NCBI RefSeq assembly: GCF_001194135.2
Contig: NC_069003.1
Location: 32,809,543 to 32,873,542, forward strand
Reading direction: 5' to 3'
From: Octopus bimaculoides
Taxonomy: Eukaryota
DNA: 64,000 bases
Shown here: piece by piece, positions 15,548-63,118 of the stretch
Layout: every line of letters begins with the position of its first letter
Position numbering within the stretch: the stretch's first letter is position 1
Position numbers and translations under genes: made by a program
Notes under the pieces: generated by a model
The model's database searches: none
What the model was told of the DNA's origin: nothing
What the model saw: the letters and a program-made list of their open reading frames with translations, nothing else

Positions 15548-17654
15548 TATGCATGTGTGTGTGTGTGTGTGTATATGAAAGGCCAGATCTGGTTGGTTTG
15601 AACATAAGACAGGTAGGATACTTGCTCTGTACTTCGCCAGTTTAACCCCTTTGTTACCATATTTCTGTTGAGATGCTCTGTCCAGCTACATGGTCAAAGA
15701 AATTCCTCTTTCTAAATAAACTGGTGTCACTGAGCAACTTATATTCTCTGACAACACCATGTGACCTGCCTTGGCCAATAGCAGCCTAACTTCCAATAGA
15801 GATTTTGGACTTCCTGTATCTCTTCACTCAATAATCTACAACCTGAAAGAGATGAGTTTCAGTTGGAGGCCTGCGAAATGGTTTGCAGCATGGAATCAAA
15901 TCAAATTTAAAGAATTTAGTAAAATAACTTAGTTATCTTTCAGCTAGTGTTAGGAACATAAATTGTGACTAAGGTTTGGTGGAAGATTTTAATTCAGAAC
16001 TTTTGAAAACTAGACATTTGTACTACAGAGCCAGAGTCGGTTTCAGCCGGGTTGGTATCAAAAAGGTTAAAGGCTAAAGATTCAGCCATGACTGAGCGGA
16101 TATATTATCAAAGACAGTCTAGTCATGATTGTCCTAGTTTTTGTTTTTCAAGCACTGTGAGTCTAGGACAATGATTTTAAACCTGCCTCCAGCTCTCTTT
16201 TAATTTCCTTAATAATCCTGTTATTATAGTGTCACTTATAAGTATACATGTATTTTAGTTTTGGTAAGCTGTTTTTGTAACCTCACAGTGCAGTAGTGCA
16301 AGGAAAACGTTTTTGTTTTGTTTTTTTCTTTTGTCAAAATCCATCACATTTTTACTATTTTGTTGGAAAATTTGCAGCATGTCCTGTTCACATGCTTGTC
16401 ATAAATTTTATTTAACTGACCCTGGACGACATCATCCAATGTATCTTTCCATCTTTGCTTTCATCTTCTACTTGTTTTACTCATTGGACTATGGCCAAGA
16501 TGGAGCACTTCATTGAAGGATAGTCAAGCAAACCGGCCTCAGTATTTATTATTTTCTTAAAGCCTGGTACTTGTTTACATCTCTGTAAATTAGTTATGGG
16601 GATGTAAACAAACCATCACCAGTTGTACAGCAGTAGTGGAGGAAAAAAATCATAAACACACAGATACACTTAATGGACTTCCTTCAACCTTCATCCACCC
16701 ATAAGACTTTTGGTTGTAGAAGATACTTGCCCAAGGTGTTGTGCAGTGGGATTGAACCAAAGACAACATAGTTAGGAAGCAAGCTTCTCAAACCACACAG
16801 CCATGCCTTAAATTACAGGATTTAATTTGAGTGAAGTTTTGCTGCTACTTCTATCAGATCAACAGAGACAACATAGAAGTTCCTCTTATTAGCTTATAGC
16901 TGTTGTGGTTCTGATGGCAATAATGCTGACTAGCAACAGTTGTGGCGCTGGAGTGAACCTACATAAGCAATAATTTATTAGTTTGCTATTTGGTTTCCAG
17001 ATTTATTAGTTTGAGCTGTGATAGCACTTTCAAGCAACCACACTCAGATAAATATATCTGGGCCAAATCTGGAAGCAAAGTAAAGCTTAAAAGTTTTCCT
17101 CTTACAACTCAAACAGAATCCAAGCAGAAGATAAGAACCAGCTTATTGAAATAAGGTGTAATACTGCCATTATAAATATACCTAATATATCTTTTCTTTC
17201 AGCTATATTTCTTAAAATAGCCATTTAATCCCTTGCAGCCAGCTAATGATGAAGCTAATAATTCCCCCAATAGACCATTAATAGGTCATTCTAATTGGAA
17301 TCCTAAAATAAAAATTATCTTACAAATCTTTTGCATAGATGTTTAAGTCTTCCTCATTGATGCTAATTTTAGGTGAAAGCAGGGAAAGCATTCTAATGGA
17401 TGTGTTTTGTACGATATATAATAATACTTTGAATTCATCTTAATGTTATTAACTGATGTTATCTTTTTGCTGAGAATCAATCAAATATTATTGACTTATT
17501 TTATAATACATTGTTTACCTTGCATTGTTTTCGATATCTTCTTATGTTATCTTGCACTAAAGTGAAGATTATAAACAACTAAAGTTGAACTTTTTTTTCT
17601 CTTTTTCTCTCATGAAATTTTGTTTTGTTTTGTTTTTCCTTTTTTTATATCCAG

Positions 17655-17845
17655 ATCCAAGGACAAAAGACTGGTTCTTCTTAGAAAGCAGTCCCTTGAA
17701 AGTATGGATTCTAACAGCAATGTACATTCTCTTTGTTATTTATGGACCAAAATATATGAAAAATCGAAAACCTTTTGATATACGTATTTTCATGGTTCTG
17801 TATAATCTTGCAATGGTTGTACTCTCTATCTATATGTTTGTTGAA
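17655..17845 (+). CDS. elovl2/5: Elongase coding exon 2 (DPRTKDWFFLESSP...GPKYMKNRKPFDIR...YNLAMVVLSIYMFVE)
   Basis: ccag| acceptor and GAA|gtgagt donor; ELO-family DPR, GPKYM.NRKP and YN motifs. Confidence 0.96.
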
Positions 17846-19307
17846 GTGAGTATTATTACTATTATTATTATTATTATTATTGAACTATTGTATTCATTGA
17901 ATATTTCAGCATGCTGAGTTTGATTTTTTTGTTGTTGTTATTTTCTTTCTTTTCAATTAAGCCATCATTTTCAAAGCCGATGCTATTTAAAATATCCATA
18001 AATGGTGTTGAACTGCTAACGAGAGCGCTTTCTTAAAAGGAAAATCCTCTTATCTACAAAAACAGTGGCAGAGCATTGGGTGCAGCTGCGGCTGTGTGGT
18101 TAAGTTCACTTTGCAATCACATGGTCCCAGGTTCAATCTCACCATATAGCAATGACACCTTGGTAGAGTGTCTTTTACCATAGTTTTGTGAAGAGCCAAG
18201 TGTTGTGAGGAGAATTTGGTATATGGGAACTGTACTGAAGCCCATTGGTTGAGCTGGATAAGTTCTAGAATGGTAATCAAAAATCTACCAAGAATCTGGT
18301 TCACTGCCAATACATGGAGCTTTTGTATGTTCAGCAGAGTCCACTCTGCTGTGAATATTCAAACTAGGTCCCTAGTCTTGAGCATACAGTGATAAATTAT
18401 TTCCTACTTTTCTGCTGTAGCGATCCATGAGTCATAATTTCTGCCCCCTTTTTCCCCCCCACGTCAAACTCTCAGAAGCTTTACAAAAAGGTCATAGGTT
18501 GCTGACCTTCAGTTTCTAAGCCATTAAAAGAAAGGGAAAAAATAATTGCTACAGATCCTCTCTAACAATTTATTCCACAAACTTTAGCATTATCTGTTAG
18601 TTATCTTTTTATTTTTTTTATTTTATTTCTTTCACTCATTGGACTGTGGCCATGCTGGTGCACCACCTTGAAGGGTTCAGTCGAACAAACTGATTCCCTG
18701 TACTGTTTTTTTTTAAACCTGGTACCTTATCAGTCTCTTTTGTGGAACCACTAAGTTACAGAGACATAAACATACCAATACTAGTTGTCAAGTGCTGGTG
18801 GGATACCTGCACACATACACACACACATATATACATAGTCATGTGTGTATATACTAGCAGAGATACCCGACGTTGCTTGGGATTAAAATGGCATAGTTTG
18901 TATATATATTACAGTTATGTTGGAATAGGTAATACGGGAAAGTGCAACATTGACGACAAAACCTTTGTGGAGTAAATGATGGGCTAATTCAACTAAGTTC
19001 CGTGACTGCAGGTAATTAGTACTAATACTATAAAATATGAATGCTATCCTTTAAGGGATAGCATGATTCTGGGTTCAGTCCCACTGTATGGCACCTTGGG
19101 CAAGTGTCTTCTGCTATAGCCCTGGGCTACCCAAAGCCTTGTGAGTGCATTTGGTAGACAGAAATCGAAAGAAGCCCATCTTGTGTGTGTGTGTGTGGTT
19201 GTGTGTTTACAATTATACTTTTTTTTTTTATTATTTCATGTAATCCATTTTTGTAAGCATTTTTTCCAGTTATATTTTTAGTGTTTCATATTTGTAAGAT
19301 GTTATGA

Positions 19308-21290: not shown

Positions 21291-21890
21291 ATTTGCCCTT
21301 TTTACCACAACCAACCAACAATGCTGCAAAGTATAGTAGTAACCAAACCACCACTATACTTGGAGCAGACAAGATGATGGTAATCGGTGTGGAGCTCTGA
21401 ACTGATTAGTAGCAGCAGTACATACAAGATCAGCATCATCGTCATCATCATCACCATTTAGTTTCTGCTTTCCATGCTGGCATGGGTTGGACAGTTTGAC
21501 TGAAACTGGTAAGCTGGAGAGCTGCACCAGGTTCCAATCTCATTTGGCATAGTTTCTACAGCTTGATGCCCTTCCTAATGCCAGTCACTCCAAGAGTGTA
21601 ATGGGTGATTTTTATGTACCAGTGCATGACATTGGTCTCAGCCACAAATACGATTTCACTTGACTTGATATACATGCATACAGACAGACAGATAGATAGA
21701 CAAGTGGCTTATTCACAATTTACGACTGAAAGGCAGAATTATGGATGTCACTAAAGTGACTGAGGGTACTAGTTAGCACCAGCATTGCTAGAAATAAGAG
21801 TCAAAGCAACTATTAGCCACAATAAAGCACTTATCTTATGACTGACAGAGGAGGCAACCTCCCTACTGCTTCCGGGGCATAGCCATAACA

Positions 21891-26382: not shown

Positions 26383-26554
26383 CTTGCTCGAGTTCTTTGG
26401 TGGTACTATTTCTCAAAAGCTATTGAATTAATGGATACAGTGTTAATGATATTAAGGAAAAAAAATGATCAAGTTACATTCCTGCATGTCTTCCATCATG
26501 CCACAATGCTGAATATTTGGTGGTGGGTTATGATGTTCATTCCTGGGGGTCAGA
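26383..26554 (+). CDS. elovl2/5: Elongase coding exon 4 with histidine box ([19 protein letters not shown]...[28 protein letters not shown])
   Basis: tttgtag| acceptor and A|gtaagt donor; KxxExxDT and HxxHH motifs. TMLNIWW resembles ELOVL2/5 rather than ELOVL4. Confidence 0.97.
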
Positions 26555-26589
26555 GTAAGTATTACCATTAATCATATTGTTTTAATAAT

Positions 26590-26817: not shown

Positions 26818-27024
26818 TTAATTATGGCTTAGTGGTTTGGGTAGTTTAGTTATTTAAACAAGTGAAAGATTCATTGTTACACTAAGGTTCCATTTATTTT
26901 ACGGTGTGTATCTAAACAAATATCTCCATTGCTTCACCAACATGTTGCTTTATGATAATAAAAATGTTGTATTCAAACGATACTTCATGTGTTCTAATTC
27001 TGTTTTATTTTCCTTTTATTTCAG

Positions 27025-27149
27025 CTTGGTTCGGTGCTTGTTTAAACTGTTTTATCCATGTTGTTATGTATACATACTATGGCCTGTCTGCTATACCATC
27101 ATTAAAAAAGAGGCTCTGGTGGAAAAAGTATATAACAAAAATGCAACTG
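27025..27149 (+). CDS. elovl2/5: Elongase coding exon 5 ([25 protein letters not shown]...[11 protein letters not shown])
   Basis: tttcag| acceptor and CTG|gtaaga donor; NxxxHxxMYxYY and WWKKYIT..Q motifs. Confidence 0.97.
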
Positions 27150-27212
27150 GTAAGACTATGTTGATGTTCTGTTTATTCATTTTTTTTTTTTTCTGATGAT
27201 GAGAAATGTTTC

Positions 27213-29776: not shown

Positions 29777-30028
29777 TTAACCAAGATTACAACTCAGAAA
29801 ATACGTTTTGCTGTAGTTGAAGTAACGAGGAGACACTACGTATAAACTAATGTACACTTTAAGGTATCATTTTATACTTAGTGATTCGTAGACTACTATT
29901 ATGCTCTGCTGAGGAAGTCTAATAAGACCAAAACCTGTCTGTTGTTATCTTCCATTCTTGCTGACCCCCCCCCCCTCTATTACTAATTAAATTGATATTC
30001 TAAATTTCATTTATTTTTTTCTTTCCAG

Positions 30029-30277
30029 ATCCAGTTCTGTATAACATTTGTTCACTCGGCAAATTCTATACGAGTGAATTGTGAATTCCCAAGCTGGGGA
30101 AAGTATCTACTCACATGTTACATGATTCTCATGATAATATTGTTCAGTAACTTCTACATCCAGGCTTACATCAAAGGCAGACGAAATCCTAATGTAGACA
30201 CAGCAAATAACTATGCGAAAAAGAAAAGCTCCCAAAATGGAAGCACCATTAATGGAACGGTGAAGAAAGCTCAATAG
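30029..30277 (+). CDS. elovl2/5: Elongase terminal exon (IQFCITF...LFSNFYIQAY...VKKAQ*)
   Basis: ctttccag| acceptor; LF.NFY motif; C-terminal KKxx ER-retrieval signal and TAG. Exon sum 885 nt = 294 aa plus stop. Confidence 0.96.
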   Translation: MQFCITFVHSANSIRVNCEFPSWGKYLLTCYMILMIILFSNFYIQAYIKGRRNPNVDTANNYAKKKSSQNGSTINGTVKKAQ

Positions 30278-31382: not shown

Positions 31383-31871
31383 TATCGAACAGTGACAATG
31401 AGTGTTCAACACCACAGTGGTGGATAAACATTCTTTATTTTTTGGGATATCAAGGCTACCAATTGTTTCATGTAACAACGTTCCCATGTGGCAGGCTTGA
31501 TAATTGTTGAGATTTCACTCTACATGAAACCATTGGTAGCCTTGTTAACCCACAAATAAAGCGTGTGTGTTTTGGAACAAAAATGAAACAAGCAGATATT
31601 TCTATACGTGTCTCTATAGCATGTTTATTTAAAATATGAGTACAGTTGTATGTATAACTTAAAAGGTATCCTTATGTACAATTGTATTTTCACAAGATTC
31701 CATTTTTTCAGGTTATACTCTGCTGAATATTTCCTAAGTAAAACACTGGCAAATATTTCAGCGACTTATAAATAATTTCATGAGGGAAGCAAAGTTTTAT
31801 CGTAAAACTTAGCAAACAAAAGGAATTCAGTGTATTCTACATGGGCTGGAGATATTTAAGTGACCTGTATG

Positions 31872-34210: not shown

Positions 34211-37200
34211 ATATATAATAATTATACACACATACCTATACTACATAAATATACTCTCACACACACACAGACATATATATATATCATCATCATCATCATC
34301 GTTTAACGTTCGCTTTCCATGCTAGCATGGGTTGGACGATTTGACTGAGGACTGGTGCAACCAGATGGCTACACCAGGCTCCAATCTAATTTGGCAGAGT
34401 TTCTACAGCTGGATGCCCTTCCTAACGCCATATGTATACACACATATACATATGTATTTATATATGTAATATACATGTATGTATACAGTTATACATATGC
34501 ACATATATTCATATGTATTTATATATATATATATGTATATACATACATATACATAACAGAAATCAGGTTTCTGTGAAAAGCTTTGCCATCTGTATTATGT
34601 TGTGAGGAAATATTCTGGTAAGTCTGGGCAGCAAGATGGCAGAATTGTTAGCATGCCTGACAAAATGCATCATGTTGTTTCTTCTGGCTTTAGATTCTGA
34701 GTTCAAATTCCACCAAGGTCAACTTTGCCTTTCTTCTTTCCAAGGTCAATGAAATAAGTACCAATTGTGCACTGGGGGCTAATGTTATTGACTGGCTCCC
34801 TTCCACAAAATTTCAGACCTTGTTCCTAGAGTAGAAAAAAGGATTATTCTAGTAAGCTAACTTTTCCTTCCAGTTGTTTTATCTGCAAACTTGATTCATT
34901 CATCATTCTGATTTTTTAAAGAAAAAAAATCTTTCAGTTCCCTTTTTCATCCCTCCAACAATCCAGGCTACCACATTATGTCTTGAAATCCATTCCATTT
35001 TCCCATGAAACAAAAGCACCTCTTTTTCAGCATTTAATTGGCTTTAACACTTGCAGTATCCTCATATTTAGACGATTGTATTTGACAAAATCCACAATGT
35101 CTACATCATTATCAAGAACAGATTCAAGCACTGGAAGTAGTGTTTACATACAAAATGCATCCTTCATCTTTCAATTGTTTTCAGTCATTGAACTGTGGCC
35201 AAGCTGGGGCACGGTCTTGAAGGGTTTTTACTCAAACAAATTAACCCCAAGCACTTTATTTAGGGCTGGTGCTTATTCTATTGTTCTCTTTCACCTAATC
35301 AACCAAGTTACAGGGATGTAAACAAACCAACACTGGTTGTTAAGTGGTAGGACAAACACAAACACGACAGCCCTCTTTCAGTTTCCGCCCATCAAATTCA
35401 TTCACAAGGCTTTGGTTAGCCCAAAGCTATAGTAGAAGACATTTATCTGAGGAACCATGCAGTGGAACTGAACCCAAAACCATGTGGTTGGGAAGCAAAC
35501 TTGTTACCAACAGCCACTCCTATGAACCATAATACAATACGTGTCTGCACATCAGAGATGACATTCAACACTCTGCAATCAGATCCACAACTCAGCATCA
35601 CAAAGGTTCCCTCGGTATTGTAGGTTTCAAGGAAGACCTTTTATGAATAAAACAAAAACTAGACATAACTTCATAGGCATGGGTGGTAAGAAGTTTGGTT
35701 GCTAACCACGTGATCCCAGGTTCAGTTCCACTGTGTGACACTTTGGACAAGTATCTTCTACTATACCCTAGGCCAGAAACTGAAAGAAGCCCAATGTGTT
35801 TGTTCCCTCGCCTATCTTTTTTTTTTTCTGTAAATTTGAACTATGTGTGTGAGTCAAAAAGTAATGCATTCCAATTGCTGGTGAGGGTTTTACATGGTTG
35901 AAGTGCAAATCCTACCTCAACCCCTTTTAGTCACTTTTAATGACATGCAGAGAAAATGTTGGGTCTATTATTTGGTATGGCAGTCCCCTGACAACATATA
36001 TAGCTGGGAAAGTTGGGGGATGAAAAAAGGTAAAGACCAAGGGTATATCGGAAAATATGCCCCTTAAGATAAAAAAAGATTGCTTTTTGACTCACCCTCG
36101 CATGTGTTTGCATCTGTGATTGTATTTGCTTGACAGCTGGTGTTGGTTTGTTTACGTCCCCATAAATTTCACAGTTCCACAAAAGAGAGATCAATAGAAT
36201 TAGTACCAAACTTAGAAAATATATATATATATATATATATATAGCACTAAGGCTGGTTTGTTTAAACCATTCAAGGTGGTGCCCCAGCATGGCCTCAGTC
36301 TAAATACTGAAACAACTAACAGAATCTTTTATGTACCTTCAGCCTTTTTGCCAGATATGTTTGGGAACAACAAAAGATATAAGAAAAAATGTTTCGAAGA
36401 CGCTAAGTTTGACCGTCTCAGGGCAGACGTAGTAGACAACTAGGGAAACAACTGAGTGAAATAGTACGATGTTCAGTGATTTTAAAGCTGACATCCAGCT
36501 AGCTTATTGTGTGTCAGGTGAACAAGATAAGTAAATTGCATTTAGTTGGTTATGATTACATCAGAGATCCAGTGATTTTACAAATCTTGCATACTCCTAG
36601 ACGTACCTGTACCCTGGTTTGAGAACCCCGTCACTTAAATAGATCTATGCATATTGGAGCATGTTTTTTCTGCAAGTGTGTGTGTATTAATGTTTGTACA
36701 CCCAACACACACACATATATGTATAGATATACACTCATATATATGCATACATATATATATGTGTGTGTTATTCATTTATATATATATATATACATACACA
36801 CATACATGTGTGTGTGTATATATATATAATTTTCAGTTATCTAAGATTGAAGTTTTACTCAGTAGATATTCTGAGTGTCTTGTTCCTATCCTTCACAGTG
36901 AATAATGGGAAATGTTTCAGTTTATATAATTTATGCATTGGTATTGCTATATGTATGTGTTTATGAGCATTACAGGTGTTATATTTATGCTTGAATGTAC
37001 AAATGGAAGAAAAAAAAAATGTGCTCAATACATTTGGTAGAGTATATTCATTCAAAGCTGTCAATTCACTGTGCTGCTACTCAGATTTTTTCTGTCAATG
37101 TGTAACTCTTCACACAACAAAAGAATTGTACACACAGACATATGTATTCATACATACATACATATATATATATATGTATACATACACACACATACACAAA

Positions 37201-38710: not shown

Positions 38711-39194
38711 CTTAAATAGCCACCAAATTTAGTGGTGTAACACAATTGAATAGACTAAATTTACACATGAAACACATTCCTGGCAACTGGTATGTACATA
38801 TTGATTGCTAGTAGGGACCTGTGTATATGTATACTTTGTGTATGCATGTGTATATTTGTGTGTGTGTATATATATGGGAAAATGTACGAAAAACAACAAC
38901 AACAGACGAGGACAGGTGGTGTAAACAACAAAAGGATGTATTAGGCATGCGGTCCATGGAAGCAAGGGCAGACATGCTTCCCTTATAAATTATAGCAATG
39001 AAATCAAAACTATATTACTTCATAAGATTGTTCTTCTAATGTTCCGTAAAATAAATATAAACCACATGACATCATAAGCTTAAGACTTTTATTGTCAGAA
39101 TTAGCATGAGATGACAAGCAGTGGCAGACAGCATCCTTTCTGGTGTAATATTTTAACATTTTTTCCAAGTGGTCCAGAATCACTCCAAGCTACA

Positions 39195-39646: not shown

Positions 39647-40259
39647 CATGCATGCACACATAAATACATACATATGTTAGAAAGAAAAAATGAACAGGCA
39701 AAACATGTGGTATTACTTGAGAGCATGGAATCTAACATAATTTGTGGAGTTGTTAGAATAAATACAGGATTAAGAAGGTAGGCATAAAATCTCTTGCAGA
39801 TGTTTCACTGAGCAAAAATCTCCATATAAAAGCCAAGTATTCTATCTTCAGAGAGGAAGAATTAAGAAATATCCTTAATAAAGCATATTAGTAATTACCA
39901 GAAATATATCTATTAAATTACATCATTAGTTACAATTATATCTGTACTATACATATATATATGGGAGAATAGGGAATTCTGTCTGTCTGGGATCCCTGTA
40001 TCCCAGTCGATATTTGCTCTACATAGACATATTATACCTTTCGATACACAATGTATCAGTTTCAAGCTCTACCTGCTGCAAAATTGGGATTCTAAGCTGA
40101 TTAAGCTTGTAAGAGTCTTTTACAATCCATTATAGCTGATCTAGGGGAGATAACCCACCTTCACCAATGCCAGACCTTTTATTCTCTAGTGACCTTTTGA
40201 CCAATTGACCATATAACAACTTTCCCTGTCTGAGAGATGAAGAGTTGAATTTGTCTTTG

Positions 40260-40327
40260 TATAGAGTCTGATGAGCTGTTCACAAAGCTGTGGCTTTCAT
40301 GGATGTGAAACCGTTGGTCACTCTATG
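40260..40327 (+). ncRNA. Type I hammerhead ribozyme motif, catalytic core intact
   Basis: Stem I ATAGAGT/ACTCTAT; CTGATGA 40268-74; imperfect long stem II 40275-306; GAAA 40307-10; stem III ACC-GTT-GGT; GTC cleavage triplet ending at 40319. Confidence 0.75.
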
Positions 40328-40391
40328 ACCAGACTTTAACTTCAGTGATTATATGTATATATATATGTGTGTATGTATATATATATATATA

Positions 40392-40545
40392 TCATCATCA
40401 TCATCATCATCATCGTTTAACGTCCGCTTTCCATGCTAGCATGGGTTGGACGATTTGACTGAGGACTGGTGAAACCGGATGGCAACACCAGGCTCTATTC
40501 TAAATTTGGCAGAGTTTCTACAGCTGGATGCCCTTCCTAACGCCA
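40392..40545 (-). mobile_element. LINE-tail-derived repeat with (CAT)n end (twin at 34284-34430; related at about 21440-21660 and 51050-51180)
   Basis: catcatcgtttaacg...ctttccatgctagcatgggttggacg...ggatgcccttcctaacgcca. Confidence 0.7.
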
Positions 40546-40643
40546 TATATATATGGGAGAATTTATGAAAAAGCAACAGACGAAGACAGGTGGTGTAAAC
40601 AACAAATGGATGTATTAGCATAACACTCGGGAATAGAGAAAGT

Positions 40644-50090: not shown

Positions 50091-51179
50091 TATCTTAAAT
50101 ACATGCAAAGCAACGTGATTTTATGAGATCAACAACTAACAAAATACAGGTGGCAGCTTTACTCTCCATTTCTCTGTCATGCTTGGGAGGATAAGATTCA
50201 GTGACGTTCAACCTGACTTGCTTCATCGTTCACAAAGCCACTCCCTTCTTTTTAACTTCCATTGGTCAAACCAGAATATTGAATCACTCTTACACTGTTG
50301 TATATTATAACTTTAAATTGTGTTTTATTGAGAACTGAATGAAGAATGCATGAATAATTTATGTTAAACCAGTAAGCTTCTGCTGACAGAAACTTAACAA
50401 AGGATAGCTAATAATAAGGATCTTGAGCAGAAGATGTTAAACATATAAAAAGAACGTCTGCAAATTGAGAGTTAACTATATCCTCCACCCATGTGTTACA
50501 TTGATTCACCTCCCCCCACTACAGAACCAAACTGCCTCCCATTATGCACTATGCCTGCCTCTCCCTCTCATGCTTCTGCAGTCTAGCCCACACCCTCTCA
50601 TCTCTCTCTCTTTCTCTCTCTCAACACACTCACTTGTCCTCCTTCCTCTGTCAACTGTATCATTACTCTCCTGCTGCTCTCCCCTCCACCAAACTCCCTC
50701 CTGCACCTCTATCCTCCCAACTCATTACCCCTCAACCCCCACCGAACTTCTTTTACAGCTGCAGGCTGTCTCTCCATCCCTCTCATCTTCTGCTCCCCCC
50801 ACACAATTTTGCAATAACCTCACCCACCTACTCCAACTTACCTCGGTGTCTTGAGGGGCCACACATCTCCCATCTACCCCTTTGTAGCTTCAAATGATCG
50901 TTTTTTTTTTCTCTCCTCTACTAAATGTGAATAACCATGCAGCTCAGCTCTTCTGCAAGAACCTGCTCTCCCACCCTTCTCTCATACTCCAACCCCTCAC
51001 CTCCCTCGGCATTTGCGGTCTTGTGAACTGCATTGCAATCTCATCAGTGCTGGTGGCACAAAACGAAGCACACAATACACGCTGTAAAGTGTTTGGTGTA
51101 AGGAAGGGCATCCAGCTGTAGAAACCAAAGCAAAGCAATCAATGGAACATGGAGCAGTTCTTGGACCCATTGGATCCTG

Positions 51180-51301
51180 ATAAACTACTGCTACTACAGC
51201 CGCCACCACCACCACCACCACTGCTGCCGCCACTACTACTACTATTACTACTACTGCTGCTGCTGCTGCTACTACTACTACTACTACTACTGCTGCTGCT
51301 G

Positions 51302-51362
<61 letters not shown>
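51180..51362. repeat. Compound (CTA/CTG/CCA)n microsatellite
   Basis: Direct reading; it generates the poly-Leu ORF artefact. Confidence 0.95.
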
Positions 51363-52249
51363 AGTACCAGACTAATTATCTGGCAAGCTTGAGACCAGAA
51401 GTGTTCTTTATTTCTGGATTTTCTGGTTTTCTGGAGAGTCTAAACTTAGGAAATAAACTCTGAGAAGTAAAGAGCTAAATTGTAATTAACAAATTCAAAT
51501 TCAAACACAATTCTAAAGCAGAGTCTGTTTAATATTTATTAATCTACATTAACAAAATAATGAACAAAACTATTTTTAATAAAACCATATGCAAATTAAC
51601 CATATTCAAAAGCAGGGTCTGTTTACTCGATACAGAGTACAGTATATTGCACAGTATTTCCGGATTTCTGGAAATTCCGGATTTCTAGAAGCCGGGCAAG
51701 AGGTCCGGTCCTATATTAATATATCGTGTCTGCTAAATATCAGATTATTCCCCCCATTATCACAATTCCTATTTCCAATTCTGATTAATTGCGTGCCTGG
51801 TGCAGAAGTTTATTATGAGTTATCTCTCTTGGTTTATGCTAGTCGAAGCAATGCTTACTTCCCTTTGATACTGGTCCTGTCTCCAAGTTATACACGTCAT
51901 ATTAACACATTTCTTTCCCTATTTCTGGTGACATACTCTGCCTTGTTTCAATTAATTTTGGGGAAAAAAAAGAAAAATGAAGAATTTAGGAAGATAACTT
52001 ATTATTAAGCTGTTGTCAGGAACAAATTTATTAAAAATTTTGATGGAAGATTTATTATTGGAAAAAATGTAGTCCACCTTTAATTTCCTTGTATTCTAGT
52101 TTTTTTTTCTTTTTTTCTGGGTGATTGCTAGCAGAATTGGTATACAAGTGGGCAAAGTGGTTCTTGTTTGTATTTACTCAAGTGCCTTTACATTTTGAGT
52201 TCAAATCCCATCAAAGGCAGCTTTCCTTTTCATCCTTCTTGGATCACTA

Positions 52250-54963: not shown

Positions 54964-56115
54964 GTAAGTGCAATGCTAATTAATTTTGCAAGGGAAATTA
55001 GGTGACATCAATAAACGAATTAAATTTTGTCCAGATTTTTGATATAAGAATTTATCATTGTACATTAACAAACTTATTATCCGGCTTCCAAAAGTCCAGA
55101 ATTTCCAGAAATCCAGAAATACTGTGCGATATCATGAAATGTACGGCACTCTGTATTGAGTAAACAGACTCTGTTTTTGAAATTGGTTATTTTGCATATG
55201 GTGTAATAAAGACAGTTTTGTTCTTTGCTTTTTTAAGTGGATTGATAAAGATTAAACATACACTGTTTTAGAATTGTATTAATTTGTACCTGTATCTGTT
55301 AAATAAAATCATGTTCTTTACTATTCTTTGTTTAACTCTTTAGCATTTAAACCAATCATATCAGACCAAAATATTCTACCTGTTTTGCCTTCTGATGAGC
55401 CAGATCAGGGTCCAGTCAATTAGATATATCCCTAGTATGCAACTGGTACTTTATTTATCAACCCCAAAAGGATGAAAGGCAAAGCTGACCTCAGCAGAAT
55501 TTGAACTCAGAACATAAAGACAGATGAAATACTGCTAAGCATTTCGCCCGGCATGCTAACCTTTCTGCCAGCTCACCACCTTTCTACATGGGATTTCTAT
55601 GCTTCAACCAGAGTTACCTTGATTTCTGGCTATGACCCCCCCTCCATACTTTTGTATTTATCAAGGACTACATTATCTAAATGTGTCTTTTCTGTCTTTA
55701 ACCCTTTTCTTACCAAATTACTATCAAAATGTATAACCATTTTATTTTCAATTAATTTTCAAAAGACAAAAAACATAATGAAGAGTTTTGTAAAGTAACT
55801 TTGTTGTTATTAAGTACTTCTAAGATGTTTGGAGCATAAATTAACACGAAATTTTGATGGAAGGTTTTTCATTTAGAATACTTTAAAAGAGTAACTTTGT
55901 ATCATAAAACCAGGAGCAGTCTCAGGTGTTGTTATCAAAAAGGTTAAGATGTTTTCAGTGGGATTTGGAAGAAGAGATTTGGTTGCTATTTCTATCAATT
56001 CATGCAATTCTACTGAACAATGATTTTTGTTGGTAACAGTGATTATTTGTAAAGTTTAATTTCTGATAAAATAGAAATGTCTTTAAAATAACAGAATCTT
56101 GGTTCTAATTTGCAG

Positions 56116-56862: not shown

Positions 56863-57293
56863 TGAAGCTCAGATATAAAATGAATATAAGATGGAATATG
56901 ATAGAAGGTGAAGAAATTATGAATGTGATGAATAGAAAATTCGTTATTGTGAATGATAATTAATTTAACATGTTAACCATCACATGTACCACTGGTGGTT
57001 CATCACAAACTTCACTCAACTGCCACTGGTAGCACATTTTCATAATTTGAGAAAATATTTTATTCTGTATCTTTGACATGGTTTTGAGTGCTAAATGTCA
57101 AAGTTTAATTCTGAAATATTGTAAAAATTATTTCAAAAATTACATTTCTTGTAATTAGTATGCAGTGTGACTGCAAGAATACATAGAGTCACCGGTAAAT
57201 TCCAGTAACATGCTATGGTGGTTAATGTGTTAATGTTTGCCTCTGTAAACTATGCCATCTCTAAAATTTCTGTTTATTTACTTCTTTATGAAG

Positions 57294-57569
57294 CTGAGGC
57301 CTCTTTATCCCAGAATGCTTGCTGTTAAGACAGACAAAGATGGAATAATTCCCAGTGAACTGTTGCGAGTTCTCTCCAAATGGTCTCCACTTGATGCCAA
57401 AGATCCAAACAGTGACATACCAAAAGTTATCTACATGGTACCAACTGGTTGCAACCCAACAGGTATCAATTATTCTTTGGAACGAAAGAAGCAAATCTAC
57501 GAAATTGCCAGAACTTACGACCTATTAATCGTAGAAGACGATGCTTATTACTACCTACAGTATTCTCAG
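57294..57569 (+). CDS. AADAT: AADAT coding exon 6 (LRPL...DKDGIIP...YMVPTGCNPTG...RKKQIYEIARTYDLLIVEDDAYYYLQYSQ)
   Basis: NPTG and EDDAYY class I aminotransferase motifs; aag| acceptor and CAG|gttaat donor; 92 codons. Confidence 0.95.
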
Positions 57570-57663
57570 GTTAATATATATGTTTTGTTGAAACTTCTAT
57601 TAAAATGAAGGCTGATGACAGTGACTTCGAAATTTTAGCTTCTATGTTATGTCTACTTTTTAG

Positions 57664-61029: not shown

Positions 61030-61286
61030 GTAAAGGGCTTTTCTTGTATTCTTTCTGTTTTCTTGGGTAGGAAGACTTAACCTTTAGTAAGTTGGAATGT
61101 CTTCTGAGCTAGGCTAAAATGAAATATTCAACTCAGCAAGAATTTTTCTCAATGGCAAACAGCAGTGAATATGGCCTTTTTATAGCTCAACTATGACTCA
61201 GATATATTTCAACTAATCTAAATGTTTGTTTACTCACTACACTGCTTTCACGTGCCTACTACAATATAATTTTATCATTGATTTAG

Positions 61287-61492
61287 GTATCGCAGAATGG
61301 AATGTTCCTGCTGGAGGTATGTTCCTATGGCTGAAGTTAATTGGTATAGAAGACACTTATAGACTCATAATGGAAAAAGGGAGAGAGAATGACATTCTTT
61401 TTGTTCCAGGAAGTGCTTTCATGACTTCTAATGAGCCATGCCCCTATATCAGGGCAGCTTTTTCTCTCTGTGATACTCAAGATATATATTTG
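61287..61492 (+). CDS. AADAT: AADAT coding exon 10 (IAEWNVPAGGMFLWLKL...VPGSAF...PYIRAAFSLCDTQDIYL); final exon not found
   Basis: atttag| and TTG|gtaagt; AEW.VP.GGMFLW motif and the substrate-binding Arg in YIRAAFS. No stop codon, so one more exon is needed. Confidence 0.95.
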
Positions 61493-61524
61493 GTAAGTAA
61501 ATTATGACTAACATAAAAGTTTAC

Positions 61525-62670: not shown

Positions 62671-63118
62671 TTTTGTTTCAGCACACGATCTCAGATCAGG
62701 CCACTTGCTATGCAAGTACATCTCCGTCAAATAAGAAGAAAAATAAATAAATAAGAAATTTTACAGATTGCATGTGTTGTAATTGTATTATACAACAGAA
62801 ATATCATTGCAACTGATAATCATTGAAAGCCAGCCCTCTGAGTCAGACAACAAACAGACTTTATGTTACTACATACTCTATAACTATTTAGAGCAGTGGC
62901 TTTCAACTGACAGGGGAGGTGGGGCATATGACCCTTGCGGGTGCATATAAGATTTTTTTTCTGTTAAAATTTATATGCAATAAATTACTTATACTTTTAC
63001 AATACGCTAAATGTCTTAATTTTTTTTGTATGCAGTTTCCATTAATATTTAATTATAAAAATCATTGTCATTATCATCATCATTTCATGTCTGCTTTCCA
63101 TGCTGGCATGAGTTGGAC

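What the first reader, a model, noticed from the sequence alone, without database searches (positions are those of the whole stretch)
40260..40327. Hammerhead ribozyme with a complete catalytic core between the two genes
Seen: TATAGAGT-CTGATGA-[GC T GTTCAC AAAGC tgtg GCTTT C ATGGAT GT]-GAAA-CC-gtt-GG-TC-ACTCTATG. Stem I has 7 Watson-Crick pairs plus a U.G, and all invariant core bases (C3 U4 G5 A6 G8 A9, G12 A13 A14 A15.1, U16.1 C17) are present with a GUC triplet. Established: this is the type I HHR topology found in Penelope-like elements and retrozymes. Inference: it may still self-cleave after 40319, although stem II is imperfect (G.U at 10.1/11.1, bulges) and stem III is only 3 bp. It ends a roughly 370-bp stretch (39960-40330) that matches no other repeat in the window.
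Basis: partly seen in the sequence, partly recalled or inferred. Interest (0 to 1): 0.85.

Follow-up and report, generated by a model that had tools for sequence, protein, structure and literature searches.

The report
Hammerhead ribozyme relic in retroelement fragment
The sequence is a genuine hammerhead-ribozyme motif, but it sits at the tail of a short, dead-looking retrotransposon fragment of a kind already known to be common in invertebrate genomes, and this copy probably cuts itself poorly or not at all.

Summary
The motif is there exactly as described (40260-40327, + strand). It has an 8-bp helix I, CUGAUGA, a long imperfect helix II, GAAA, a 3-bp helix III, and GUC with C17 at 40319. 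It is unlikely to be chance: a relaxed hammerhead descriptor finds only this locus with the canonical core, against about 0.002 expected per shuffled window. Helix I continues outward to 40242-40342. The motif ends 26 nt before the 3' end of a 375-bp non-coding insertion (39971-40345). That insertion lies in a (TA)n tract and is flanked by a 19-nt target-site duplication. A second hammerhead-like motif at 31489-31548 has the same helix III, different but still paired helices I and II, and the known U3/A8 core variant. This architecture fits the dispersed type I hammerheads of 5'-truncated Penelope-like elements or their non-autonomous relatives. Three results argue against activity. No Rfam hammerhead model matches, even at about 8 bits. 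The hammerhead fold is about 10 kcal/mol less stable than a rod-like fold. The conserved G10.1-C11.1 pair is G.U here. There is also no partner copy for dimer cleavage. No relatives outside the window could be retrieved. Verdict: a real but ordinary new member of a known kind, and interest is low.

The parts
40260..40327 (+). Type I hammerhead motif. Helix I is 40260-40267/40320-40327, the core CUGAUGA is 40268-40274, helix II is 40275-40306, GAAA is 40307-40310, helix III with its loop is 40310-40318, and C17 is 40319 (predicted cleavage between 40319 and 40320).
40242..40342 (+). Extended ribozyme domain. Helix I continues outward as GUCU 40253-40256 with AGAC, then 8 more pairs (40242-40249 with about 40334-40342), separated by two internal loops. 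The domain reaches almost to the 3' end of the element.
   Evidence: MFE -32.5 kcal/mol, z = -3.05, 1 of 200 shuffles as stable.
39971..40345 (+). Non-coding mobile-element fragment of 375 bp that carries the hammerhead 26 nt from its 3' end. It has no other copy in the window.
   Evidence: no ORF, stops in all frames; not unusually structured, z = 0.0; empty-site reconstruction.
39952..39970 (.). Left copy of the target-site duplication, (AT)n plus GGGAGAAT.
   Evidence: 19/19 identical to 40544-40562. GGGAGAAT occurs only at these two places in the window.
40544..40562 (.). Right copy of the target-site duplication. It continues into a repeat that also occurs at 38851-38948.
   Evidence: the joined flanks align colinearly with the paralogue at 38.85-38.95 kb, and the junction falls right after GGGAGAAT.
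40346..40394 (.). (TA)n/(TG)n microsatellite abutting the 3' end of the element. It is the target tract.
40395..40543 (-). SINE copy (minus orientation, (GAT)n tail) lying between the element and the right TSD copy. It is read as a later, separate insertion into the (TA)n tract.
   Evidence: copies at 34273-34438 (93%), 21434-21583 (82%) and 63061-63118. The copy at 34.3 kb is also flanked by TA repeats.
31489..31548 (+). Second hammerhead-like motif (locus B): GGCAGGC-UUGAUAA-[UUGUUGAG auuuca CUCUACAU]-GAAA-CC-auu-GG-U-A-GCCUUGUU. It has the U3/A8 core variant and the same helix III as the finding.
31439..31556 (.). 36-nt inverted repeat (arms 31439-31474 and 31521-31556, 89% complementary) that encloses locus B and masks its 3' half.
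   Evidence: (z = -5.6).

Best explanation
The motif is the hammerhead ribozyme of a retrotransposon, most probably the pseudo-LTR/3'-terminal part of a 5'-truncated Penelope-like element (PLE) or of a short non-autonomous element mobilised by PLEs.

Shown:
- A 375-bp non-coding unit (39971-40345) inserted into a (TA)n tract and duplicated 19 nt of target.
- A type I hammerhead with a complete core and a long, interrupted helix I occupies the last ~100 nt of that unit.
- A later SINE insertion separates the unit from its right-hand target duplication.

Inferred from the family's published biology:
- In the active source element the ribozyme would cut the element's RNA 3' of C17. This leaves a 2',3'-cyclic phosphate and a 5'-OH and trims the transcript from read-through or tandem precursors.
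- With a 3-bp helix III, cleavage would probably need two neighbouring copies that pair through helix III as a double hammerhead.

Inferred for this copy:
- It is a solo relic. It has no partner copy and a weakened helix II base (G.U at 10.1/11.1).
- That G.U is consistent with CpG-to-TpG decay of an ancestral CGAAA.
- A more stable competing rod fold also exists.
- It therefore most likely cleaves very slowly or not at all, and it has no host function.
For: - The motif and coordinates are verified.
- It is the only canonical-core descriptor hit in the window, against 0.002 expected with helix I >=8 bp.
- Helix I extends to 20 bp over 40242-40342, z = -3.05.
- The 19/19 TSD and the colinear empty-site reconstruction against the paralogue at 38.85 kb show that 39971-40543 is an insertion.
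- The element has no ORF.
- The hammerhead ends 18 nt, and the cleavage site 26 nt, before the microsatellite.
- Literature: PLE hammerheads lie in pLTRs near the 3' end; PLEs insert preferentially into microsatellites including (TA)n and carry short 3' 'tails'; most genomic motifs are dispersed single copies from truncated PLEs (PMC8557442, PMC4209133, PMC11167929).
- Penelope elements are among the most abundant repeat families in coleoid cephalopod genomes (PMC8967140, PMC13282606). This applies only if the window is cephalopod, which I infer but did not verify.
- Locus B (31489-31548) shares the exact 12-mer GAAACCRUUGGU (about 0.015 exact matches expected by chance).
- B also shares a colinear upstream block, 27/32 identical (score 27 against a maximum of 25 in 500 shuffles and 24 in 646 genomic segments).
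- B scores 17.8 bits with the structure model but only 2.5 bits with the sequence-only model.
- B keeps 97.6% of pairs, with 7 pairs changed on both sides.
- B carries U3/A8 in place of C3/G8, a core covariation reported for Schistosoma PLE hammerheads (PMC4209133).
- B also ends about 30 nt before a microsatellite and lies in an inverted-repeat arrangement like those described for PLE insertions (PMC8557442).
Against: - No Rfam hammerhead family matches at any threshold tried.
- No RT or GIY-YIG coding remnant is attached, so PLE membership rests on architecture alone.
- No family consensus or copy number could be obtained. The protein database had no relatives even of the flanking host gene, and the metagenome scan gave only chance prokaryotic hits.
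[quoted passage not shown] Its helix I is also longer than the 4-5 bp described.
- The hammerhead fold is predicted to be about 10 kcal/mol less stable than the MFE rod.
- Locus B was picked by a structure model, so its pairing is partly selected for. Its 5' half also resembles a direct repeat of its own 3' tail (TGGCAGGCTTGATAA versus TGGTAGCCTTGTTAA), which offers a non-ribozyme origin for 'UUGAUAA'.
Confidence: 0.62

Rival explanations
1. The unit is a solo copy of a metazoan non-LTR retrozyme or a SINE-like hammerhead element (as in Schistosoma Sm-alpha or mussel and coral retrozymes). These are short non-coding retroelements whose RNA is cut by its own type I hammerhead, circularised and retrotransposed by another element's machinery.
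For: The 375-bp size lies within the 150-450 bp range of metazoan retrozyme monomers, and GC is below 45% (PMC7229834). There is no ORF. The hammerhead has a real helix III (A-U plus 2 bp with a small loop) and a long helix I, closer to invertebrate retrozyme hammerheads than to helix-III-less min-HHRs (PMC7229834, PMC7761336).
Against: The unit is not in tandem and has no second copy in 64 kb. Its RNA is not unusually self-paired (z = 0.0 on + and 0.13 on -), whereas retrozyme circRNAs are described as highly self-paired. Helices I and II do not have the canonical 6-bp/4-bp sizes, and no recognisable loop-loop motif is present. Rfam Hammerhead_1 gives no hit.
Confidence: 0.2
2. The motif is a chance look-alike: an AT-rich local hairpin that happens to contain CUGAUGA and GAAA...UC at the right spacing.
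For: No covariance-model support. The MFE is a simple rod rather than a three-way junction. Helix II is irregular. An AT-rich look-alike with the U3/A8 core at 55699-55775 (-) shows that relaxed descriptors do produce chance hits.
Against: The expectation of 0.002 per window applies before counting three further observations: the extra 12 bp of helix I, the position at the 3' end of a TSD-flanked insertion in a microsatellite, and locus B with an identical helix III and compensated helices. These observations are independent of the descriptor.
Confidence: 0.07
3. The motif is a host-exapted cis-acting ribozyme that processes a long 3' UTR or read-through transcript of the upstream ELO-family gene, by analogy with the Clec2 3' UTR and amniote intronic hammerheads.
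For: The hammerhead is on the same strand as the ELO gene, whose CDS ends near 30277. Locus B lies only 1.2 kb downstream of that stop codon, also on the + strand.
Against: The finding lies 10 kb past the stop codon, inside a recognisable insertion with an intact TSD, so it is young and not conserved. The ribozyme fold is disfavoured. No evidence of transcription or of orthologous conservation could be obtained.
Confidence: 0.04

Closest known systems
Hammerhead motifs of Penelope-like elements (PLE pLTR 'min-HHR' and variants with a small helix III; Cervera & de la Pena 2014, PMC4209133; Craig et al. 2021, PMC8557442)
   Same: Type I connectivity and a complete core. Helix II is longer than usual. 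Helix III is very short with a small loop, which predicts dimer-dependent and weak cleavage. The motif occurs as a dispersed single copy in non-coding DNA, near the 3' end of the inserted unit with a short tail. The insertion is in a microsatellite with a TSD. The sister locus B shows the U3/A8 core variant and an inverted-repeat arrangement.
   Different: No RT/GIY-YIG ORF or second pLTR is attached. [quoted passage not shown] Position 10.1/11.1 is G.U instead of the highly conserved G-C. Helix I is 8 bp (20 bp with interruptions) rather than 4-5 bp. Helix II is 32 nt with bulges. Loop 3 (GUU) is not palindromic.
Canonical type I hammerheads of metazoan non-LTR retrozymes and satellite or SINE-like repeats (newt satellite 2, Schistosoma Sm-alpha, coral, mussel and axolotl retrozymes; PMC7229834, PMC7761336)
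   Same: Type I connectivity, a GUC cleavage triplet and a helix III of A-U plus 2 bp with a small loop. The carrier is a non-coding unit of a few hundred bp with low GC.
   Different: The unit is not tandemly repeated, and its RNA is not highly self-paired. Helices I and II are not the canonical 6 and 4 bp, and no recognisable loop 1-loop 2 interaction is present. Rfam Hammerhead_1, which was built on such sequences, does not match.
Poseidon PLE of Anolis carolinensis (PAc) hammerhead (PMC11167929)
   Same: The hammerhead lies a few tens of nt upstream of the end of genomic insertions. An AUG inside or next to the core opens a reading frame through the ribozyme: here A6-U7-G8 at 40271 opens 22 codons up to a TAA at 40337.
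   Different: In PAc that frame is the start of the RT ORF, and insertions end 111-118 nt into it. Here the frame stops after 22 codons, and nothing links it to an RT.

Membership tests
Hammerhead ribozyme, type I | Conserved core: C3 U4 G5 A6 N7 G8 A9, G12 A13 A14, A15.1-U16.1, H17 | tested here: met
   CUGAUGA at 40268-40274, GAAA at 40307-40310, U16.1 at 40318, C17 at 40319.
Hammerhead ribozyme, type I | Three helices around the core, with the open ends in helix I | tested here: met
   Helix I is 8 bp (20 bp with two internal loops). Helix II is 12 bp with a bulge and an internal loop. Helix III is 3 bp with a GUU loop.
Hammerhead ribozyme, type I | G10.1-C11.1 pair closing helix II | tested here: not met
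   G40275 faces U40306 (G.U). U11.1-G12 is a TpG, so a CpG transition from CGAAA is a plausible origin (inference).
Hammerhead ribozyme, type I | Match to a curated covariance model (Rfam Hammerhead_1, _3, _II, HH9, HH10) | tested here: not met
   no hammerhead family listed at gathering or at E<=10, even on an 85-nt query where a 7.7-bit match to another family was listed.
Hammerhead ribozyme, type I | The hammerhead fold is at or near the minimum free energy | tested here: not met
   -11.1 kcal/mol against -21.7 for a rod; double hammerhead -30.1 against -43.4 for two rods. Nearest-neighbour models ignore the tertiary contacts of the core.
Hammerhead ribozyme, type I | Stems preserved by compensatory changes in relatives | tested here: inconclusive
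   Only one candidate relative (locus B). It shows 7 pairs changed on both sides and 97.6% of cells paired, but the alignment is fitted to the model and has two sequences.
Hammerhead ribozyme, type I | Site-specific self-cleavage 3' of position 17 | not testable with these tools
   Needs in vitro transcription or end-mapping of RNA.
Penelope-like element (PLE) pLTR / 5'-truncated copy | ORF with telomerase-like RT and GIY-YIG endonuclease | tested here: not met
   The insertion has no ORF, and the larger ORFs in the window give no RT or GIY-YIG Pfam hit. A 375-bp 5'-truncated copy would not be expected to retain one.
Penelope-like element (PLE) pLTR / 5'-truncated copy | Hammerhead in the terminal repeat close to the 3' end, followed by a short tail | tested here: met
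   the cleavage site lies 26 nt before the end of the element at 40345. Compare PMC8557442 and PMC11167929.
Penelope-like element (PLE) pLTR / 5'-truncated copy | Insertion into microsatellites with a variable TSD | tested here: met
   a 19-nt TSD made of (AT)n plus GGGAGAAT. Locus B abuts (CA)n/(GT)n.
Penelope-like element (PLE) pLTR / 5'-truncated copy | Tandem or inverted partial copies (pLTR structure) | tested here: inconclusive
   No tandem or inverted partner at the finding. Locus B lies in a 36-nt inverted repeat.
Penelope-like element (PLE) pLTR / 5'-truncated copy | Sequence homology to a curated PLE family of the same genome | not testable with these tools
   No eukaryotic genome or Repbase/Dfam library is available here. 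Searches gave nothing usable.
Metazoan non-LTR retrozyme | Head-to-tail tandem repeats of 150-450 bp, each with a hammerhead | tested here: not met
   no second copy of 39971-40345 in the window.
Metazoan non-LTR retrozyme | Monomer RNA highly self-paired (rod-like or branched circRNA) | tested here: not met
   MFE equals the shuffle mean (z = 0.0 and 0.13).

The most novel reading that the evidence does not exclude
The finding and locus B could belong to an undescribed cephalopod family of short hammerhead-bearing retroelements. In that family an upstream arm complementary to helix III and the cleavage site would act as a conformational mask of the ribozyme. That arm is UGACCAAUUG versus CCGUUGGUCA at the finding, and a 36-nt inverted repeat at B, with G-C at the finding against U-A at B opposite position 17. 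The catalytic C3-G8 pair would also covary to U3-A8 between family members. Copies lying downstream of the ELO gene on the same strand could cleave its read-through transcripts.
Probability: 0.08. Interest if true: 0.5.

Novelty: new member of a known kind. Interest (0 to 1): 0.25.

Why it matters
If confirmed genome-wide, the finding would add a cephalopod-type lineage to the list of animals whose Penelope-like or retrozyme-like elements carry type I hammerheads. It would also supply another natural example of the U3/A8 core covariation. That is useful for annotating repeats and for training ribozyme descriptors, because Rfam models miss this variant. It does not change what is known about ribozymes or about the neighbouring genes.

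Tried and rejected
- **Rfam cmscan.** Run on the whole window at gathering and at E<=10 on 271, 85 and 721 nt. It gave no hammerhead, tRNA or other credible family, only low-complexity microRNA-like matches on the (TA)n tract.
- **ARAGORN.** No tRNA-like head in the element or in the SINEs.
- **Species and orthologues.** The aminotransferase exon found no relatives in the protein database. The database therefore seems to lack this eukaryote, and the planned route to orthologous loci was dropped.
- **Metagenome scan.** The query CTGATGAGC-N20-40-GAAACCGTTGGTC gave four prokaryotic chance matches (one lies inside what looks by eye like a thiolase-type gene); none is related.
- **Literature search for the SINE sequence.** No paper found. 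The Lunse et al. 2017 paper on dimeric PLE hammerheads is not held, and no supplements are held for Cervera 2014.
- **Coding remnant upstream of the hammerhead.** Stops in all six frames.
- **Retrozyme-like self-pairing of the 375-nt unit.** Rejected.
- **Weak sequence-only hit at 18490-18528 (-)** to the 3' half of the hammerhead (E = 0.52). It has no core upstream and was rejected as chance.
- **AT-rich U3/A8 look-alike at 55699-55775 (-)** with an 11-bp helix I. It has a low-complexity context, no helix III and no similarity to the finding. The shuffle expectation of 0.005 probably understates chance, so it is treated as a probable chance hit.

Full report
**1. The observation**

UAUAGAGU / CUGAUGA / GCUGUUCACAAAGC-UGUG-GCUUUCAUGGAUGU / GAAA / CC-GUU-GG / U / C / ACUCUAUG

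- Helix I has seven Watson-Crick pairs and a distal U.G.
- Every invariant core base is present.
- The cleavage triplet is GUC, with C17 at 40319.
- Helix III is A15.1-U16.1 plus two C-G pairs around a GUU loop.
- Helix II is long and irregular: G.U, C-G, a bulged U, five pairs, a 1x2 internal loop, five pairs and a UGUG loop.

**2. Is it more than chance?**

I wrote a deliberately loose RNAmotif-style descriptor. It requires CUGANGA, a helix II region of 8-60 nt with at least two pairs at its base, GAAA, helix III of 0-4 extra pairs with a loop of 0-8 nt, U then not-G, and at least four contiguous helix I pairs.

- On both strands of the window it finds only this locus.
- In 3000 dinucleotide-preserving shuffles it finds 0.093 loci per window with helix I >=4 bp and 0.002 with helix I >=8 bp.
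- Helix I also continues beyond the motif. GUCU (40253-40256) pairs with AGAC, and eight more pairs join 40242-40249 to about 40334-40342, giving about 20 pairs interrupted by two internal loops.
- The 108-nt domain folds with z = -3.05.

A rate of 0.002 per 61 kb still means on the order of a hundred chance hits in a genome of a few Gb. The context below therefore matters as much as the motif statistics.

**3. Context**

The window is a draft eukaryotic assembly with eight N gaps and about 35% GC.

- ELO-family (fatty-acid elongase) exons lie at 17.6, 26.4, 26.9-27.2 and 30.0-30.27 kb on the + strand. They cover Pfam ELO positions 2-240 of 242, so the CDS ends near 30277.
- Class I/II aminotransferase exons lie at 57.25-57.6 kb and, identified by eye only (Pfam gave no hit for it), at 61.2-61.5 kb on the + strand.
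- The finding is therefore intergenic, 10 kb past the elongase stop codon.

From memory, the SINE with a (GAT)n tail and the microsatellite-rich sequence look like an octopus genome. I could not verify this, because the protein database returned nothing for the aminotransferase exon and a literature search for the SINE sequence found nothing.

**4. The carrier is an insertion**

- Self-BLAST shows that 39971-40345 has no other copy in the window.
- 40395-40543 is a SINE in minus orientation, with copies at 34273-34438 (93%), 21434-21583 (82%) and 63061-63118.
- A 19-nt direct repeat, (AT)n plus GGGAGAAT, occurs at 39952-39970 and 40544-40562. GGGAGAAT occurs nowhere else in the window.
- The right-hand copy runs on into a repeat that has a paralogue at 38851-38948.
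- When the left flank (up to 39970) is joined to the right flank (from 40563), the product aligns colinearly with that paralogue, and the junction falls exactly after GGGAGAAT.

So 39971-40543 was inserted into that older repeat with a target-site duplication. The SINE family also sits in TA tracts elsewhere. I therefore read it as a later insertion into the (TA)n part of the right-hand duplication. That leaves a 375-bp hammerhead-bearing unit, 39971-40345.

The unit has stops in all six frames. Its RNA is no more structured than shuffles (z = 0.0 and 0.13). The perfect 19/19 duplication argues that the insertion is fairly young. If the chance of seeing no change in 38 nt is set at 5% or more, divergence is below about 8% (my calculation). 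The irregular helix II is then probably largely a family trait rather than decay.

**5. A second, related motif**

I built a covariance model from the finding alone plus its hammerhead structure and ran it without filters. It gave one further hit below E = 1, at 31485-31551 on the + strand (17.8 bits, E about 0.016).

Read by eye it is GGCAGGC / UUGAUAA / UUGUUGAG-auuuca-CUCUACAU / GAAA / CC-auu-GG / U / A / GCCUUGUU.

- Helix III is the same as in the finding. The exact 12-mer GAAACCRUUGGU occurs only at these two places (about 0.015 exact matches expected by chance, my calculation).
- Helices I and II differ in sequence but still pair. The core carries U3 and A8 in place of C3 and G8. Cervera and de la Pena reported exactly that covariation for a Schistosoma PLE hammerhead family (PMC4209133).
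- A sequence-only model gives this locus just 2.5 bits, so about 15 bits come from structural fit.
- On the model-fitted two-sequence alignment, 97.6% of cells pair and seven pairs differ on both sides. Slid controls give 0-1.
- Upstream, a 32-nt block is shared colinearly: 40200-40230 with 31458-31490, 27/32 identical. The local alignment scores 27, against a maximum of 25 in 500 shuffles and 24 in 646 genomic segments.
- This locus also ends about 30 nt before a short (GT)n run and has a (CA)n tract on its other side. It lies inside a 36-nt, 89%-complementary inverted repeat.
- PLE insertions are described as often carrying an inverted 5'-truncated partner (PMC8557442).

Caveats:
- The locus was selected by a structure model.
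- There are only two sequences.
- Its 5' half also resembles a direct repeat of its own 3' tail.

An extended descriptor that accepts the U3/A8 core recovers the locus. Such cores are commoner by chance in this AT-rich sequence, with 0.056 expected at its helix I quality.

**6. What it is**

The literature distinguishes two settings for animal type I hammerheads.

- Canonical motifs occur in tandem repeats of 150-450 bp, the non-LTR retrozymes. Their RNAs are highly self-paired circles (PMC7229834, PMC7761336).
[quoted passage not shown] Thousands of dispersed single copies per genome are attributed to truncated PLEs (PMC4209133).

PLE hammerheads lie near the 3' end. PLEs favour microsatellite targets including (TA)n, and their insertions carry short tails that reflect internal initiation of reverse transcription (PMC8557442, PMC11167929).

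The finding fits the PLE pattern on several points. It is a single copy, non-coding and 5'-truncated in appearance. The hammerhead sits 26 nt from the 3' end, the target is a (TA)n tract, and a TSD is present. It fits the retrozyme pattern poorly: no tandem copies, no self-paired RNA and no canonical helix sizes.

It is not a textbook min-HHR either. It has no unpaired base between positions 9 and 10.1, it has G.U at 10.1/11.1, and its helix I is long. PLE membership cannot be shown without the RT/GIY-YIG-bearing relatives, which these tools cannot reach. I put about 0.6 on PLE or PLE-dependent origin, 0.2 on a retrozyme or SINE-like element, under 0.1 on chance, and a few per cent on host exaptation.

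**7. How it works, and whether this copy does**

Established for the family: the hammerhead cleaves 3' of position 17 by in-line attack and leaves a 2',3'-cyclic phosphate and a 5'-OH. Motifs with a very short helix III are poor monomers and cleave as double hammerheads when two copies are adjacent. Even then, PLE motifs are slow in vitro (PMC4209133, PMC6765202).

For this copy:
- The nearest-neighbour energy of the hammerhead fold is -11.1 kcal/mol. A rod that pairs the two core strands scores -21.7.
- The double hammerhead scores -30.1, against -43.4 for two rods.
- The helix II base is G.U then C-G then a bulge.
- No second copy lies within 64 kb.
- No Rfam hammerhead model scores it at all.

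These energy models ignore tertiary contacts in the core, and Rfam models are known to under-detect PLE-type variants. None of this therefore proves inactivity, but together it makes efficient self-cleavage unlikely (my estimate is about 10-15% for detectable monomer activity). U11.1-G12 is a TpG, the expected product of CpG decay from the canonical CGAAA. That is an inference a family consensus could test.

**8. Verdict**

This is a real hammerhead motif in an ordinary setting. It is a new member of a known kind, most likely an inactive relic, and interest is low (0.25). The one mildly interesting lead is that both loci pair the 3' half of the ribozyme with an upstream complementary arm and differ by a C3-G8 to U3-A8 swap. 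That lead needs genome-wide copies to evaluate.

Noticed in passing
window 31489-31548 (+), inverted-repeat arms 31439-31474 / 31521-31556: Second hammerhead-like motif with the U3/A8 core variant and the same helix III as the finding. It is enclosed in a 36-nt inverted repeat (hairpin z = -5.6), lies 1.2 kb downstream of the ELO stop codon on the same strand, and sits between (CA)n and a short (GT)n run.
   Followed up: partly
window 55699-55775 (-): AT-rich hammerhead look-alike (UUGAAAA core, 11-bp helix I, GAAA, U-A) in low-complexity sequence. It has no helix III and no similarity to the finding, so it is probably chance.
   Followed up: partly
window 40395-40543 (-), 34273-34438 (-), 21434-21583 (-), 63061-63118: A SINE family with a (GAT)n tail. 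The younger copies are flanked by TA microsatellite on both sides, and neither ARAGORN nor Rfam finds a tRNA-like head.
   Followed up: partly
window 38851-38948 and 40546-40640 (+): An unclassified repeat that begins (TA)n GGGARAAT and continues ...GACGARGACAGGTGGTGTAAACAACAAA... The copy at 40.5 kb is the target into which the hammerhead element inserted.
   Followed up: partly
window 40198-40207 versus 40311-40321: Upstream UGACCAAUUG is complementary (9 of 10) to CCGUUGGUCA, which covers the helix III 3' strand and the cleavage site. The region also holds three GACC repeats (GTGACC TTTT GACC AATT GACC). It may be an alternative pairing that masks the ribozyme, as the long inverted repeat does at 31.5 kb.
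   Followed up: no
window 40271-40339 (+): The AUG formed by A6-U7-G8 of the core opens a 22-codon frame (MSCSQSCGFHGCETVGHSMTRL*) through the ribozyme. In the Anolis Poseidon PLE the RT ORF starts within the hammerhead (PMC11167929), but here the frame stops before the end of the element.
   Followed up: no
window 17585-17917, 26383-26568, 26916-27161, 29996-30274 (+); 57252-57608, 61226-61507 (+): Exons of an ELO-family fatty-acid elongase (Pfam ELO positions 2-240 of 242) and of a class I/II aminotransferase that looks by eye like kynurenine/aminoadipate aminotransferase. The protein database returned no relative of the aminotransferase exon.
   Followed up: partly
window 18490-18528 (-): Weak sequence similarity (6.3 bits, E = 0.52) to the 3' half of the hammerhead (GAAACUGAAGGUCA...CUAUGACC), with no CUGAUGA upstream. 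Probably chance.
   Followed up: yes
window 51149-51463 (+): A long CTG/CTC-type simple repeat that reads as a poly-leucine and poly-proline ORF. It is low-complexity and not a gene.
   Followed up: no
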